Notes: generated by a model from the letters alone, not told the origin. A DNA stretch of 63,278 nt, filler included, from Octopus bimaculoides (GCF_001194135.2; 6 parts of 6 records of this genome joined end to end with filler, not necessarily neighbours in it); one strand, 5' to 3'. Counted from the whole stretch's first letter, positions 30,332 to 35,497 are shown. Made by a program: numbers and translations.

Positions 30332-30380
30332 AACCCTAACCCTAACCCTAACCCTAACCTTAGGGTTAGGGTTAGGGTTA
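30332..30380. repeat. Inverted telomere-like repeat (CCCTAA)n/(TTAGGG)n
   Basis: Perfect 20-bp arms 30337-30356 and 30361-30380 around a 4-nt loop ACCT. Confidence 0.85.
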
Positions 30381-30629
30381 ATTGTTTCAGAATCGTTTGT
30401 TTATGTAGTCGGCACTTAATGTATATCGGCTGAATGGACGTCAGTGATTGGTTGAAATTACAGAAATACGACAACTTTAACATGGAATAACTTATGGATT
30501 TCTTTTTTTTTTAAGAAGACTAAGAGAAAAAGATGACACATTCTACCAGTGTTCCAACTTTCAAAGTGTTTCGTTAATGAAAAATGTGGGCCCCCGTTTT
30601 AAAAAAGATCCGAATTTGGTAAATATGGA

Positions 30630-31000
30630 AGCCTTCCACTCTGATCTTGATTTGGAAGTTGAGTAGAGAGAGGGTTCTGGATTCGTCTGGATGTTCAATC
30701 TCGTATTTGATGTTTGTCGGTGTTATTAAAGGTCTGGTTTATGTTAATGGCCTTATCCCTGGAAGATGTAATGATAAGGATGTCATCAACGTACCTGGAG
30801 AAGAAGATGCATGAGCGACAGGTATTGAGTACTGTGCATTCTAGCTTATCCATGTACATGATAGCCAGCGAGCCTGAAAGGTTAGATCCCATAGGTAGGC
30901 CGGAAGTCTGTTTGTAAATCACACTGTTATATTGGAAGTAGGTGTTACCATCTATACTGGTTAGTAACTCTTGCCAATGCAACACCAATGTCCTCTCACT
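30630..31000 (-). mobile_element. Penelope-like RT fragment (third PLE lineage)
   Basis: TYFQYNSVIYKQTSGLPMGSNLSGSLAIMYMDKLE..FSRYVDDILII..EIEHPDESRTLSLL. Confidence 0.88.
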
Positions 31001-31039
31001 GATTAACCGGAGATTGATTTTTAAAATGAGGATATCTGA

Positions 31040-31107
31040 AATAAACTCAACTGCTCTCACAAATGAGAATGATAAAAATGAACCTTACCATTCTCAAAAA
31101 TTAAGTG

Positions 31108-31142
<35 letters not shown>

Positions 31143-31330
31143 AAAAATAATTTAGAATCCTTGTCTGGTACTGGATTGATCCCAAAACCTAATGAGTTTG
31201 TGCCAGTCATGAGTCCAAACATCCCTGAAAGTTTCATCCATATCCATCCAGTGGTTCTTGAGATATCTTGTCCACAGACAAACAAACAAACATAGCTGAA
31301 AACAATAGCTCTGCCAAGGTGGAGGTAATA
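31040..31330 (+). mobile_element. Helentron/DINE-like non-autonomous element end
   Basis: GAAAGTTTCATCC..GTGGTTCTTGAGATATC..(CAAA)n followed by the terminal hairpin CTCTGCC-AA-GGTGGAG-GTAATAATA. Class assigned from recalled structure. Confidence 0.45.
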
Positions 31331-31369
31331 ATAATAATAATAATAATAATATTAATAGTAACAATAATA

Positions 31370-31812
31370 ATCCTTTCTACTATAGGCACAAGGCCTGAAA
31401 TTTGAAGAAGCGGGATAATCGATTGTATATCACTCTCAGTACATAACTCCTACTTGGTTTATCAACTCCGAAAGGATGAAAGGCAAGTCGACTTTGGTGG
31501 AATTTGAACTCACAACATAATGCTGCTAAGCATTTTGTCTGGTGTGCTAATGGTTCTGCCAGCTGACCACCTTAAATAGCAATAATAATAATAATGCTTT
31601 CTAGTATAGGCACAAGGCCTAGATTTTGTGGAGAGGTGGGATATTCAACCACATCGACCCCAGTACTAAACTGGTACTTAATTTATCGACCCTGAAAGGA
31701 TGAAAGGCAAAGTCGACCTCGGTGGAATTTGAACTCGGTTCGTAGCAGCAGACAAAATACTGCTAAGCATTTCACCTGACATACTAACGATTCTGCCAAC
31801 TCGTTGCCTTAA
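31370..31812 (-). mobile_element. Two tandem SINE family B copies (31370-31575, 31600-31812)
   Basis: Each has AGGCACAAGGCCT...GAAAGGATGAAAGGCAA.GTCGAC...GAATTTGAACTC...TTCTGCCA and is preceded by an (AAT)n tail. Confidence 0.85.
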
Positions 31813-32659
31813 TTAATCATAATGAAGAAGAAGAAGAAGAAGAAGGTGGTAATCCAGTAGAATAGAACTGGAAACTTCGTCGGACATCACTGTTTTAAAC
31901 ATCTGAGATTGTGATTAGATATAACTATAGGAAAGTAGTTGAAGCGAATCACGTCGGGGGTCACCAATTATAGGAAAGTAGTTATACACCATTAGGTGTA
32001 CACCCGCTTTCCTATATTAAACTCAAAAGAAACAACGAAACACTGACTCTGAACTATCAACACAACAATATATATTTATGGAGGAAATAGGCATCTTTAA
32101 TCTTGGTTGCTGAGACGCCTTCTGTGAGAGAGCTCTGTTGGACATCTGTCCTCTTCGCTGGCCGGCGAGAAAAGAGAATGAAAAGAGNNNNNNNNNNCTT
32201 CGCTGGCCGGCGAGAAAAGAGAATGAAAAGAGCGGGAACGTTTTAGATGTTGAATTCCACGCATGCGCACGAGACAAGGCGTTACTACATAACGATGTAA
32301 CGATTTTTCACTTTTAAATAATTACTGTAACTTTGAAGGTTTCACACAATTCTGTTGTATACACACATTATTACAGCCTTAAAGTAAATCTTCATCAGCT
32401 CACCATTTCCAGATTTAAACAGTGGATCCATGTGTTGTGCCTTTTTACCAAAATAGAAAGATGTTCTCTCGTTAGAGTTTGTCAAAGGTTTTCTCCATTA
32501 AATTCTGACAAAAACGTGCACCTTTAGCAGTAAATTTGCATCATGTCAGAATGAAGCAGTGAGGCTGGTTCTACAATTGCAGACGTAATACATAATGTGT
32601 ATATTAGGGTACTGCAAACACAACTTTTTAACTCGCAGACAGATGTACACACATGTGCA

Positions 32660-32810
32660 GTAATGAAGTTCAATCCTCATCGACGTGATATCAGGTTTAG
32701 TCCCTCTGTGTGGCACCCTGAGCAAGTGTCTTCGACTATGGCAGCAACCCCGGACCAACCAATGCGTCATGAGTGGATTCAATAGACGGAAACTGAAAGA
32801 AGCCCACATT
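32660..32810 (+). mobile_element. SINE family A head fragment
   Basis: GGTTTAGTCCC..GTGGCACCCTGAGCAAGTGTCTTC..GACGGAAACTGAAAGAAGCCC. Confidence 0.7.
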
Positions 32811-32984
32811 GCAATGACATGGAAAGAAACTGAGGTATGATTGGTGTTCTGTGTTGTCACCTTCCAGTCAACAAATCGTTTGGAAGATCTGATCTTTAGA
32901 AGAAGACTCCTTTATTTAAAATTGAAAAACAAGTCGGAGTTAAAATTAGAAACGGCATCTGACTGTGAAACAATACTAACTCAA

Positions 32985-33295
32985 TATATATTTTTCTAAT
33001 TCGAGCGAGATCGTTGCCAGTGCCGCCGAACTGGCTTTTGAGCAGGTAGCACGTAAAATACACCATCTTGAGCGTGGCCGTTGCCAGTACCGCCTGACTG
33101 GCCTTCGTGCCGGTGGCACGTAAAAGCACCTACTACACTCTCGGAGTGGTTGGCATTAGGAAGGGCATTCAGCTGTAGAAACTGTGCCAAATCAGATTGG
33201 AGCCTGGTGTAGCCATCTGGTTTCACCAATCCTCAGTCAAATCGTCCAACCCATGCTAGCATGGAAAGCGGACGTTAAACGACGATGATGATGAC
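32985..33295 (+). mobile_element. Family C repeat (RTE-type tail, (GAT)n end)
   Basis: CACTCTCGGAGTGGTTGGCATTAGGAAGGGCAT...GCATGGAAAGCGGACGTTAAACGACGATGATGATG. Confidence 0.78.
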
Positions 33296-33619
33296 GATAT
33301 GTTAGCAAGGGAAAACAAACATAATGATATACGTAAGTAGATACAAATACACACACACACACATATATATATATAAATAAATAATATAATATTATATGTA
33401 CATGCATATATGGGTACAGGACATCACCAACGATGCAAATAACATACACTTGAGAAATAGATACAAGATGTGGACTGTAATTACAGGACAAAAAAAGTGA
33501 AATACGCAGACAACAAGAAAAAGTGGCAGACAGAACAAATTAACACAGTAAAAGGACCCTTCATCAGCTGTCGGTTGTCTATCTACTCCTTTTCCTGTGT
33601 TAACTTTGCCTTTTTTTTC

Positions 33620-33947
33620 CCATTTTTACTTATTGCTTACGTATTTCACAGAAGCAAGGTAACTGAGTTCCTTTTGAGCATTGGGCCTCATGGAAGCAAA
33701 GTGGCTGAGTTCCGTCCAAGTGTTGGACCTCATGCAGGTATTGTGTCATGCTTGAGGAGACTCACCAAGCAGAGCAAAATCGCAGTCATGGCAGATACCG
33801 GTATCGTGCAAATGGCACCCATTACACTCTCGGAGTGGTTGGTATTTAGGAAGGGCATCCAGCCATAGAAAACCAGGCCAAATCAGACTGGATCCTGGCA
33901 CAGCCTTCCCATGCCAGCGTATACAATGGACGTTAAATGATGATGAT
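33620..33947 (+). mobile_element. Family C repeat
   Basis: ACACTCTCGGAGTGGTTGG..AGGAAGGGCATCCAGCC..TGGACGTTAAATGATGATGAT, then a gap. Confidence 0.72.
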
Positions 33948-34791
33948 NNNNNNNNNNNNNNNNNNNNNNNNNNNNNNNNNNNNNNNNNNNNNNNNNNNNN
34001 NNNNNNNNNNNNNNNNNNNNNNNNNNNNNNNNNNNNNNNNNNNNNNNNNNNNNNNNNNNNNNNNNNNNNNNNNNNNNNNNNNNNNNNNNNNNNNNNNNNN
34101 NNNNNNNNNNNNNNNNNNNNNNNNNNNNNNNNNNNNNNNNNNNNNNNNNNNNNNNNNNNNNNNNNNNNNNNNNNNNNNNNNNNNNNNNNNNNNNNNNNNN
34201 NNNNNNNNNNNNNNNNNNNNNNNNNNNNNNNNNNNNNNNNNNNNNNNNNNNNNNNNNNNNNNNNNNNNNNNNNNNNNNNNNNNNNNNNNNNNNNNNNNNN
34301 NNNNNNNNNNNNNNNNNNNNNNNNNNNNNNNNNNNNNNNNNNNNNNNNNNNNNNNNNNNNNNNNNNNNNNNNNNNNNNNNNNNNNNNNNNNNNNNNNNNN
34401 NNNNNNNNNNNNNNNNNNNNNNNNNNNNNNNNNNNNNNNNNNNNNNNNNNNNNNNNNNNNNNNNNNNNNNNNNNNNNNNNNNNNNNNNNNNNNNNNNNNN
34501 NNNNNNNNNNNNNNNNNNNNNNNNNNNNNNNNNNNNNNNNNNNNNNNNNNNNNNNNNNNNNNNNNNNNNNNNNNNNNNNNNNNNNNNNNNNNNNNNNNNN
34601 NNNNNNNNNNNNNNNNNNNNNNNNNNNNNNNNNNNNNNNNNNNNNNNNNNNNNNNNNNNNNNNNNNNNNNNNNNNNNNNNNNNNNNNNNNNNNNNNNNNN
34701 NNNNNNNNNNNNNNNNNNNNNNNNNNNNNNNNNNNNNNNNNNNNNNNNNNNNNNNNNNNNNNNNNNNNNNNNNNNNNNNNNNNNNNNNNNN

Positions 34792-35497
34792 CAGAGCCAG
34801 AAATCAGGGATCTGGAACTATCCAGTAATTTTTGCCAGTTTATTTTGTCTCTTCGTCTTTGCTCCTGTGTGCTATATGAACATTTTATTGTGTTTTAGAG
34901 TCAAGATTTGGCTGCTATTTCCAGCATAGCGGTATCTCATCGATACCCTAAATTATAATTTTAAAAAATTGTTACCTTTGATGGTTTTTATTCCCATGCT
35001 GGCCACTTGATAAAAAATCGATATCTAACTATCGATCTTATCCTTATTTATATAAATTTATTTCGTCATTACATTCACTGCGATGATATTCTGACCGTAT
35101 CGCACAAGGAGTTTTTTTGGCGGGCAGTTTAAACTGGTCGTCTGCATACGTGCGCATATATATATGTATGTATACGTTCGTATATCGTATATTATGTATA
35201 TATATTTGTATTTTATGTGCTTTTCTGAGTGTATTCCACTGATGAGGCAAAGCATTTCTTATGCAAAGCCAGAAATCCAGGATCTGGAATTATCCAGTAA
35301 TTTTTGCTAGTTTATTTTGTTTTCTTCGTCTTCGCTCCTGTCTGCTATATGAACATTTTATTGTGGTATAGAGTCAAGCTTTGGCTGCTATTTTCAGCAT
35401 GGCGGTATCTCTTAGATACCCTAAATTATAATTTTAAATAATTGTTACCTTTAAATATCGATCTTATCCTTATTTATATAAATTTACATATATATAN
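34792..35497 (+). repeat. Tandem ~472-nt hammerhead-bearing unit (retrozyme-like or PLE-derived)
   Basis: 34795-35053 aligns with 35268-35485; the second copy has a ~50-nt deletion. Both copies carry the HHR 3' half GCCAGAAATC..GGATCTGGAA. Confidence 0.8.
35233..35290 (+). ncRNA. Type I hammerhead ribozyme (one extra A before GAAA)
   Basis: ATTCCA-CTGATGA-GGC AAA GCAT TTCTT ATGC AAA GCC-A-GAAA-TCC A GGA-TC-TGGAAT. 6-bp stem I, two-part stem II, stem III ATCC/GGAT. Predicted cleavage after AUC at C35284. Confidence 0.75.

What the first reader, a model, noticed from the sequence alone, without database searches (positions are those of the whole stretch)
34792..35497. Retrozyme-like tandem unit: two hammerhead cleavage sites 472 nt apart that could release a circularisable RNA
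Seen: a type I hammerhead at 35233-35290 (6-bp stem I ATTCCA/TGGAAT, CTGATGA core, stem II GGC/GCC plus inner GCAT/ATGC, GAAA, stem III ATCC/GGAT, AUC triplet). Seen: a second copy of its 3' half one unit upstream (predicted cleavage at C34812; its 5' half is in the gap). The unit is non-coding and the two copies have diverged. Established: metazoan non-LTR retrozymes are tandem HHR-bearing monomers of a few hundred nt that give circular RNAs and are thought to be PLE-mobilised. Inference: cleavage at 34812 and 35284 frees monomer 34813-35284, and ligating it rebuilds an HHR (stem I TTCCA/TGGAA). Both copies keep an extra A between stem II and GAAA, an unusual core variant. I do not know of such a cephalopod family, but I could not search.
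Basis: partly seen in the sequence, partly recalled or inferred. Interest (0 to 1): 0.85.

Follow-up and report, generated by a model that had tools for sequence, protein, structure and literature searches.

The report
Hammerhead-bearing tandem repeat in octopus DNA
A non-coding ~472-base repeat in an octopus genome carries a hammerhead self-cleaving RNA motif at the repeat junction, so it looks like a "retrozyme" (a small mobile element that spreads through circular RNA); that class is already known in other animals, and activity here is unproven.

Summary
A complete type I hammerhead-like motif lies at 35233-35290 (+). Its 3' half recurs 472 nt upstream at 34792-34818, directly after an assembly gap. 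The two repeat copies are 91.5% identical, and both carry an extra A between helix II and GAAA. A relaxed descriptor gives about 1.5e-4 chance hits in this piece. A covariance model built from four experimentally validated retrozyme hammerheads (coral, mussel, axolotl) scores the site 20.2 bits (E~1.5e-4). The best background score in ~158 kb was 13.8 bits. Rfam 15 reports no hammerhead family here, but it also missed real Penelope-element hammerheads that I fetched.

The unit is non-coding, 34% GC and strongly self-paired (z about -4.4). A Penelope-like reverse transcriptase remnant lies in the same piece. The DNA is Octopus (bimaculoides or a close relative).

The retrozyme-like reading is therefore plausible, about 0.6. 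Several things are not shown:
- a second complete ribozyme
- an array beyond 1.5 units
- any other genomic copy
- cleavage
- circular RNA

The core insertion would fail standard hammerhead descriptors, and the copies are old. This is a new member of a known kind, of modest interest.

The parts
35233..35290 (+). Complete type I hammerhead-like motif: helix I 35233-38/35285-90, CUGAUGA 35239-45, helix II 35246-70 (3 bp + AAA/AAA internal loop + 4 bp + 5-nt loop), inserted A35271, GAAA 35272-75, helix III 35275-83, C17 = 35284 (predicted cut after it)
   Evidence: Sequence. Only descriptor hit in the piece. Model R1 scores it 20.2 bits, E~1.5e-4, over the full model length. No Rfam hit.
34792..34818 (+). 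3' half of a second hammerhead copy (end of helix II, inserted A34799, GAAA, helix III, C34812, helix I 3' strand UGGAAC). Its 5' half would lie in the assembly gap.
   Evidence: It differs from copy B at 4 positions, all in loops or at the distal helix I pair.
34813..35284 (+). Predicted 472-nt monomer between the two predicted cleavage sites: non-coding, 34% GC, strongly self-paired
   Evidence: MFE -121.2 kcal/mol, z -4.7 and -4.4. Still z -4.1 without the TA tract. GC. No ORF over 68 aa.
35285..35486 (+). Partial second unit (copy B), 91.5% identical to 34813-35060, with a 47-nt deletion. It then runs into CATATATATA at the piece edge.
   Evidence: The end matches copy A 35152-35162, so the array may continue beyond 35496.
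35146..35225 (+). TA-rich, microsatellite-like tract inside the unit, just 5' of the hammerhead
   Evidence: TRF period 26 at 35146-35200. It gives spurious miRNA-like Rfam hits.
33949..34791 (.). Assembly gap (843 N) hiding the upstream part of the array, including the 5' half of the first hammerhead
30698..31060 (-). Context only: degenerate Penelope-like-element reverse transcriptase remnant (YVDD motif), on the opposite strand 4.2 kb away
   Evidence: Pfam RVT_1 8e-11. 1767 relatives found. 6 of 10 long relatives carry RVT_1 plus a C-terminal GIY-YIG hit at E<=0.01; three reach Pfam's cut-off.

Best explanation
This is a genuine hammerhead-derived element: a type I hammerhead sitting at the junction of head-to-tail ~472-bp non-coding units in an Octopus genome. 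It is a cephalopod representative of the metazoan non-LTR retrozyme / hammerhead-satellite class.

Inferred mechanism:
1. A multimeric + strand transcript is made.
2. The ribozyme cuts after C17 in each unit. It probably works as a double hammerhead, because the monomer's helix III is only 3 bp while two copies can form a 4+4-bp helix III.
3. The released ~470-nt RNA has 5'-OH and 2',3'-cyclic phosphate ends, which a host tRNA ligase can circularise.
4. The circle is copied into tandem cDNA by a Penelope-like element's reverse transcriptase.

What is shown: the motif, its statistical excess, its resemblance to validated retrozyme ribozymes, the tandem layout, and the compositional and structural properties of the unit.

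What is inferred: transcription, cleavage, circularisation and mobilisation.

These two copies are old (8.5% diverged, with indels) and share an inserted A in the core, so they may be weakened or dead relics of the family.
For: - All core nucleotides and three helices are in type I order.
- About 1.5e-4 chance hits are expected in the piece.
- Model R1 was built from coral, mussel and axolotl retrozyme hammerheads (PMC7229834 Suppl. Table 2). It scores the site 20.2 bits, against 7.9 for the next hit in the piece.
- The best non-hammerhead background score was 13.8 bits in 80.8 kb of other loci and 13.1 bits in 72 kb of bacterial DNA.
- The 3' half is repeated 472 nt upstream, with the same inserted A.
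- The 4 differences between the two hammerhead halves all fall at loop or distal positions (p 0.004-0.04).
- The unit is 34% GC, non-coding and self-paired with z about -4.4, more so than its reverse complement at -3.0. This matches the published description: tandem units of 150-450 bp, GC below 45%, 'highly self-paired' (PMC7229834).
- Hammerhead-bearing Penelope-like elements co-exist. There is an RT remnant in the piece and a textbook min-hammerhead at L006:11434-11475 on an O. bimaculoides chromosome.
- Rfam's silence is weak evidence, because it also missed the real Penelope-element hammerheads in L003 and L004.
Against: - No Rfam hammerhead hit at E<=10.
- The inserted A between C11.1 and G12 interrupts the core. 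The insertions described in the papers I read lie elsewhere: between A9 and 10.1, U13a, A6a, 2a/2b (PMC4209133, PMC3088659).
- Only one complete ribozyme and about 1.5 units are visible.
- No copy of the unit was found in 41.7 kb of O. bimaculoides DNA or about 85 kb of fetched loci, nor in metagenome or viral pattern scans.
- The hammerhead fold (-9.2 kcal/mol) loses to a competing hairpin UCCAG-GAU-CUGGA (-12.8 kcal/mol), and helix III has probability 0.002 in the monomer.
- The AUC triplet was 'essentially absent' from the natural hammerheads known in 2006 and favours metastable misfolds (PMC1636495).
- Genome-wide, about 90 chance motifs are expected under my relaxed descriptor, so one motif alone proves nothing.
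Confidence: 0.6

Rival explanations
1. A chance hammerhead look-alike inside an ordinary local tandem duplication of AT-rich intergenic DNA. There is no ribozyme ancestry and no RNA function.
For: - Rfam reports nothing.
- The core is interrupted by an extra A.
- The hammerhead fold is not the MFE, and the 58-mer's stability is unremarkable (z -0.83).
- High self-pairing is not unique to the unit: two of seven control windows gave z -2.8 and -4.3.
- No other copies were found.
Against: - Only about 1e-4 to 1e-3 chance hits are expected in this piece or window.
- An independent model built from validated retrozyme ribozymes scores the site 6.4 bits above anything non-hammerhead in ~158 kb.
- The motif sits in a tandem unit, with the copy differences confined to non-essential positions.
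- The architecture (6-bp helix I, G10.1-C11.1, near-palindromic short helix III) is the metazoan type I pattern described in PMC4209133.
Confidence: 0.22
2. A fragment of an autonomous Penelope-like element: tandem or solo pseudo-LTRs carrying that element's hammerhead, rather than an independent non-autonomous retrozyme family.
For: - Penelope-like elements carry hammerheads in their pseudo-LTRs and insert as partial tandems (PMC4209133, PMC8557442).
- A Penelope-like RT remnant lies in the same 5-kb piece.
- A 2026 preprint derives retrozymes from pseudo-LTRs (10.64898/2026.07.22.740005).
Against: - The RT remnant is 4.2 kb away, on the opposite strand, and separated from the unit by SINE-like repeats.
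- No ORF lies between the two cleavage sites.
- The Penelope-element hammerheads I could inspect (L006 in Octopus; L003 and L004) are minimal motifs with the extra nucleotide on the 5' side of helix II and a 1-2-bp helix III without a loop. This motif is different.
Confidence: 0.12
3. The duplication is an assembly artefact next to a gap.
For: The repeat abuts an 843-N gap and the scaffold end. Elsewhere in the piece, a 35-nt exact duplicate flanks a 10-N gap (32153-32232), which shows the assembly does make such errors.
Against: The two copies differ by 19 substitutions and by 1-nt and 47-nt indels. Artefactual duplicates are identical.
Confidence: 0.02

Closest known systems
Metazoan non-LTR retrozymes (e.g. 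Mytilus galloprovincialis Mg353, Acropora millepora Amil224, axolotl Ax330/Ax353; Cervera and de la Pena 2020, PMC7229834)
   Same: Type I hammerhead at the junction of head-to-tail, non-coding, AT-rich units of a few hundred bp. Helix I is 6 bp, and helix III is short and near-palindromic. The unit is predicted to be highly self-paired. Hammerhead-bearing Penelope-like elements co-exist in the genome. A model built from these four ribozymes finds the site.
   Different: - The unit is 472 bp, slightly above the 150-450 bp quoted (though within the 51-972 bp range of the 2026 preprint).
- Helix II is long: 3 bp + a 3x3 internal loop + 4 bp, instead of 3-4 bp plus a loop.
- An A is inserted between C11.1 and G12.
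- The triplet is AUC rather than GUC or GUA.
- Only about 1.5 units are seen.
- Copy number, transcripts and cleavage are unknown.
Penelope-like element minimal hammerheads (Cervera and de la Pena 2014, PMC4209133), including the Octopus example at L006:11434-11475
   Same: Type I topology, a single extra nucleotide at the helix II/core junction, a longer-than-usual helix II, an expected need to act as a dimer, and the same host genome.
   Different: - The extra nucleotide is on the opposite strand of the junction (11.1/12 rather than 9/10.1).
- Helix III here has 3 bp and a loop, instead of 1-2 bp with no loop.
- Helix I is 6 bp.
- No adjacent RT/GIY-YIG ORF on the same strand.
Newt satellite 2 and Schistosoma Sm-alpha hammerhead repeats
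   Same: Tandem or SINE-like repeats of about 330 bp with a type I hammerhead whose weak helix III favours double-hammerhead cleavage (PMC6155905).
   Different: Those ribozymes have an uninterrupted core and proven cleavage, and (from my own knowledge) they belong to the seed of Rfam's type I hammerhead family. This motif does not reach any Rfam hammerhead model.
Plant LTR retrozymes (PMC4918200)
   Same: Non-autonomous, hammerhead-bounded, and propagated through circular RNA.
   Different: Those use type III hammerheads inside LTRs, with PBS/PPT, >55% GC and 600-1000 nt circles. None of that applies here.

Membership tests
Hammerhead ribozyme, type I | Conserved core C3 U4 G5 A6 N7 G8 A9 / G12 A13 A14 / A15.1-U16.1 / H17, in type I order | tested here: met
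   CUGAUGA 35239-45, GAAA 35272-75, U35283, C35284. My descriptor hits only this site in the piece.
Hammerhead ribozyme, type I | Uninterrupted core (no insertion between helix II and G12) | tested here: not met
   A35271 (and A34799 in the other copy) lies between C11.1 and G12. Insertions described in the papers I read are at other positions.
Hammerhead ribozyme, type I | Helices I, II and III closing on the core, with G10.1-C11.1 | tested here: met
   Helix I is 6 bp, helix II is 3+4 bp starting with G35246-C35270, and helix III is 3 bp. In the thermodynamic ensemble, helix II has p>0.96, helix I about 0.4-0.7 and helix III 0.002.
Hammerhead ribozyme, type I | Match to a curated covariance model (Rfam hammerhead families) | tested here: not met
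   No hammerhead family at E<=10 on 5.2 kb or on 121 nt. Caveat: Rfam also missed the real Penelope-element hammerheads in L003 and L004.
Hammerhead ribozyme, type I | Match to a model of experimentally validated retrozyme hammerheads | tested here: met
   R1 scores the site 20.2 bits, E~1.5e-4, over the full model length. The background maximum was 13.8 bits.
Hammerhead ribozyme, type I | Site-specific self-cleavage | not testable with these tools
   Needs in vitro transcription of monomer and dimer constructs.
Metazoan non-LTR retrozyme | At least two consecutive tandem units, each with a complete type I hammerhead (criterion of 10.64898/2026.07.22.740005) | tested here: inconclusive
   One complete motif plus one 3' half. 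The other 5' half falls in the 843-N gap. About 1.5 units are visible, and TRF does not report the repeat.
Metazoan non-LTR retrozyme | Unit of a few hundred bp, GC <45%, no ORF | tested here: met
   472 nt and 34% GC. Longest ORF is 68 aa. No protein relatives for the six-frame translation.
Metazoan non-LTR retrozyme | Many copies or arrays in the genome | tested here: inconclusive
   None in 41.7 kb of O. bimaculoides or ~85 kb of fetched loci. No tool here searches a cephalopod genome by DNA.
Metazoan non-LTR retrozyme | Highly self-paired monomer RNA | tested here: met
   z -4.7 and -4.4. However, 2 of 7 control windows were also low.
Metazoan non-LTR retrozyme | Expression as linear and circular monomer RNA | not testable with these tools
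   No RNA-seq access.
Metazoan non-LTR retrozyme | Co-existence with autonomous hammerhead-bearing Penelope-like elements | tested here: met
   An RT remnant lies in the piece. An RT fragment with a min-hammerhead lies on O. bimaculoides CM046608.1.
Penelope-like element pseudo-LTR hammerhead | Minimal motif: extra nucleotide between A9 and 10.1, and helix III of 1-2 bp | tested here: not met
   The extra nucleotide is on the 3' side of helix II, and helix III is 3 bp plus a loop. Compare L003, L004 and L006.
Penelope-like element pseudo-LTR hammerhead | Flanks an RT/GIY-YIG ORF on the same strand | tested here: not met
   The only RT remnant is on the - strand, 4.2 kb away.

The most novel reading that the evidence does not exclude
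The inserted A between C11.1 and G12 is not decay. It is a functional, family-wide core variant of a cephalopod-specific retrozyme whose hammerhead still self-cleaves (probably as a dimer) and yields abundant ~470-nt circular RNAs in octopus tissues. That would be a natural hammerhead with a bulge at a core junction not previously known to tolerate one.
Probability: 0.15. Interest if true: 0.5.

Novelty: new member of a known kind. Interest (0 to 1): 0.35.

Why it matters
If confirmed, it would extend hammerhead retrozymes to cephalopods. I found no paper in the searched library reporting them there. It would also add a candidate source of small circular RNAs in octopus tissues.

It would provide a natural test of whether the hammerhead core tolerates a bulged nucleotide between helix II and G12. 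This is the mirror image of the known A9/10.1 insertion in Penelope-element and CChMVd ribozymes.

It does not open a new category. Tandem type I hammerhead repeats are already described across many animal phyla, including molluscs.

Tried and rejected
1. Rfam 15 cmscan on the piece and on 121 nt around the motif found no hammerhead family, only low-complexity miRNA-like noise.
2. I tried to find other copies through spurious ORFs. A 45-aa ORF and a 1281-aa six-frame concatenate of the unit gave no relatives among 5.8 billion proteins. Exact look-ups of a 68-aa unit ORF and a 132-aa ORF from elsewhere in the piece found nothing on record.
3. Exact-pattern DNA scans gave 0 hits in metagenome contigs (two patterns) and 0 in viral contigs. 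The bacterial/archaeal genome scan gave 9 hits. All were chance matches in coding DNA with no CUGANGA upstream.
4. I fetched about 85 kb around relatives of the RT remnant, including 41.7 kb of O. bimaculoides. There was no copy of the unit, only TA-microsatellite matches.
5. I looked for alternative registers that would give an uninterrupted core: shifting helix II, a G.A pair at 10.1/11.1, or placing the extra nucleotide on the 5' side. None works with the sequence.
6. There is no hammerhead on the - strand of the unit.
7. Mis-assembly was rejected because of the divergence between the copies.
8. The search for homologous proteins on the RT remnant returned nothing. The exhaustive HMMER search was needed to place it.

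Full report
**What is in the sequence**

The finding's piece is window 30332-35496.
- AUUCCA (35233-38)
- CUGAUGA (35239-45)
- helix II: GGC / AAA / GCAU-UUCUU-AUGC / AAA / GCC (35246-70)
- an extra A (35271)
- GAAA (35272-75)
- UCCAGGA, then U35283 and C35284
- UGGAAU (35285-90)

All 13 conserved hammerhead core nucleotides and the G10.1-C11.1 pair are present, in type I order.

One detail needs correcting. A 4-bp ATCC/GGAT helix III would leave a 1-nt loop. The monomer can therefore form only AUC/GAU with a 3-nt loop. Two copies could form a 4+4-bp intermolecular helix III around an A.A mismatch (-9.0 kcal/mol).

The 3' half recurs at 34792-34818, directly after an 843-N gap. It has the same extra A (34799) and a predicted cut after C34812. 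The repeat spacing is 472/473 nt. The copies are 91.5% identical over 224 aligned nt, with 1-nt and 47-nt indels. This is a real, old duplication and not an assembly artefact.

Copy B ends ...AAATTTA|CATATATATA at the scaffold edge. That matches copy A at 35152-35162, so the array may continue beyond the piece. Only about 1.5 units are visible, and TRF does not report the period.

**Is it more than chance?**

I wrote a descriptor just loose enough to accept the motif, with one inserted nucleotide allowed next to helix II. It finds only this site on either strand of the piece. In 815 Mb of first-order Markov sequence of the same composition it gave 14 hits with helix I >=6 bp. That corresponds to:
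- about 1.5e-4 expected in the piece
- about 90 in a 2.7-Gb genome

The motif is therefore unexpected locally, but a lone motif would not be proof genome-wide.

Rfam 15 reports no hammerhead family at E<=10, either on the whole piece or on 121 nt around the motif. I weigh this lightly, because the same search also missed the genuine Penelope-element hammerheads in loci L003 and L004.

As a more relevant test, I took the four experimentally validated retrozyme hammerheads printed in Supplementary Table 2 of Cervera and de la Pena 2020: coral Amil224, mussel Mg353, axolotl Ax353 and Ax330. I aligned them, built a covariance model (R1) and searched with filters off.
- The candidate is the top hit at 20.2 bits, E~1.5e-4, over the full model length. 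A35271 is treated as an insertion, and loop 2 has 19 nt instead of 7.
- The next hit in the piece scores 7.9 bits.
- In 80.8 kb of other fetched loci, the best scores were two real Penelope-element hammerheads (14.7 and 13.9 bits) and one junk hit (13.8 bits).
- In 72 kb of bacterial DNA the maximum was 13.1 bits.

**Further internal evidence**

The four differences between the two hammerhead 3' halves fall as follows: one in the helix II internal loop, two in loop 3, and one at the outermost helix I pair. None touches the core or the inner pairs. The chance of this placement is 0.004-0.04, depending on how the last position is classed. This is a post hoc test on a small sample.

The 472-nt monomer (34813-35284) has these properties:
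- It is 34% GC.
- It has no ORF over 68 aa and no protein relatives in any frame.
- It folds far better than shuffles: z -4.7 and -4.4, and still -4.1 without its TA-rich tract.
- Its reverse complement reaches only -3.0.

Five of seven control windows in the piece lie between +0.8 and -1.3. Two lie at -2.8 and -4.3. The property is therefore supportive but not unique.

**Evidence on the negative side**

- The isolated 58-mer prefers a competing hairpin, UCCAG-GAU-CUGGA (-12.8 kcal/mol), over the hammerhead fold (-9.2 kcal/mol). Helix III has probability 0.002 in the monomer.
- The AUC triplet was 'essentially absent' from the natural hammerheads known in 2006 and favours metastable misfolds, although it is catalytically good (PMC1636495).

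**Context**

The ORF at 30698-31060 (-) is a reverse transcriptase fragment (Pfam RVT_1 8e-11). An exhaustive HMMER search found 1767 relatives. Of ten long relatives, six have RVT_1 followed by a C-terminal GIY-YIG hit at E<=0.01 (three reach Pfam's cut-off), which is the Penelope-like element architecture.

Two relatives lie on chromosomes of assembly GCA_001194135.2. From my own knowledge, that is Octopus bimaculoides. The window's SINE-like repeat 33093-33298 matches those loci at 94-95%. The window is therefore Octopus, either bimaculoides or a close relative.

On one of those loci, about 900 nt downstream of the RT fragment and on the same strand, sits a textbook Penelope-element minimal hammerhead (L006:11434-11475):

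GAUAU CUGAAGA A GGAAU-UUUUAU-AUUCC GAAA UA U U|AUAUC

Two metagenomic Penelope-like elements (L003, L004) have the analogous CUGANGA-N-GCC GUUAA GGC-GAAAC-GU motif next to their ORF ends. Hammerhead-bearing autonomous elements therefore co-exist in this genome, as the retrozyme model requires.

Their ribozymes differ from the candidate in two ways. Their extra nucleotide lies between A9 and 10.1, and their helix III has no loop.

**Interpretation**

The best-supported reading (about 0.6) is a hammerhead-derived, retrozyme-like tandem repeat. The published class is defined as type I hammerheads in tandem, AT-rich, non-coding units of 150-450 bp, expressed as highly self-paired circular RNAs and co-existing with Penelope-like elements (PMC7229834). 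A 2026 preprint reports units of 51-972 bp, mostly seven or fewer units per array, and sometimes only a handful of copies per genome.

All testable features match. The inferred mechanism is transcription of a multimer, cleavage after C17 (probably as a double hammerhead), circularisation by a host ligase, and reverse transcription by a Penelope-like element. That mechanism is taken from those papers and is not shown here.

The inserted A is at a position where I found no described natural variant. The described insertions are A9/10.1, U13a, A6a and 2a/2b. Standard screens would discard the motif as a 'cryptic mutant hammerhead' in a repeat. Together with 8.5% divergence and indels, this makes it likely that these particular copies are weakened or dead. 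Of the validated ribozymes, axolotl Ax353 has a U.U at 10.1/11.1, so that junction is not completely rigid.

**Rivals**

- A chance look-alike in an ordinary duplication (about 0.22).
- A pseudo-LTR fragment of an autonomous Penelope-like element (about 0.12). This is disfavoured by the motif type, the strand, the distance, and the lack of an ORF between the sites.
- Mis-assembly (about 0.02).

**What I could not do**

No tool here searches a cephalopod genome or transcriptome by DNA. Copy number, arrays, covariation and back-spliced reads, which are the decisive tests, remain open. Indirect routes all failed: spurious ORFs, pattern scans of the metagenome, viral and prokaryote collections, and about 85 kb of fetched loci.

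**Verdict**

This is a new member of a known kind, with a possibly new core variant if it proves active. Interest is modest (0.35).

Noticed in passing
window 30698-31060 (-), extending with frameshifts to about 30560: Degenerate Penelope-like-element reverse transcriptase remnant (YVDD; RVT_1 8e-11). Six of ten long relatives carry a C-terminal GIY-YIG hit at E<=0.01. It is cut off on one side by an A32 tract and SINE-like repeats, and on the other by the piece start.
   Followed up: yes
L006:11434-11475 (+), O. bimaculoides CM046608.1: Textbook Penelope-element minimal hammerhead (5-bp helix I, CUGAAGA, extra A before a 5-bp helix II, GAAA-UA-UU), about 900 nt 3' of an RT fragment on the same strand. 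It appears neither in my model R1's hit list (E<=10) nor among Rfam-type matches to the related loci.
   Followed up: partly
L003:250-300 (+) and L004:3455-3500 (+): Two metagenome-derived Penelope-like elements (1040- and 1050-aa ORFs) each have a CUGANGA-N-GCC GUUAA GGC-GAAAC-GU minimal hammerhead. One is just upstream of the ORF start, the other about 300 nt downstream of the ORF end. Rfam missed both at E<=1.
   Followed up: partly
window 30332-30381: Head-to-head telomere-type repeats, (AACCCT)4 abutting (TTAGGG)3, forming a perfect 21-nt palindrome at the very start of the scaffold. This could be an interstitial telomeric sequence or an assembly fold-back artefact.
   Followed up: no
window 31344-31820: Two tandem units of about 224-237 bp from a SINE-like repeat, with a tRNA T-arm-like GGTGGAATTTGAACTC segment (reverse orientation). 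They match several places in O. bimaculoides locus L005 at 66-84%. ARAGORN calls no tRNA.
   Followed up: partly
window 33000-33298 and 33815-33948: Another dispersed repeat (...CACTCTCGGAGTGGTTGG...GGACGTTAAACGA(TGA)n). It is 94-95% identical to copies in O. bimaculoides loci L005 and L006, and this is what identifies the source genome as Octopus.
   Followed up: partly
window 32153-32232: An exact 35-nt duplicate (CTTCGCTGGCCGGCGAGAAAAGAGAATGAAAAGAG) on both sides of a 10-N gap. This looks like an unmerged contig overlap, i.e. an assembly artefact.
   Followed up: no
window 35276-35288: UCCAG-GAU-CUGGA is an inverted repeat that spans the predicted cleavage site. It out-competes helices I and III in the predicted ensemble. 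Copy A (34804-34816) has a weaker version.
   Followed up: partly
window 31108-31139: An A32 homopolymer immediately beside the truncated RT remnant, possibly the poly(A) tail of a + strand retroposon inserted into it.
   Followed up: no
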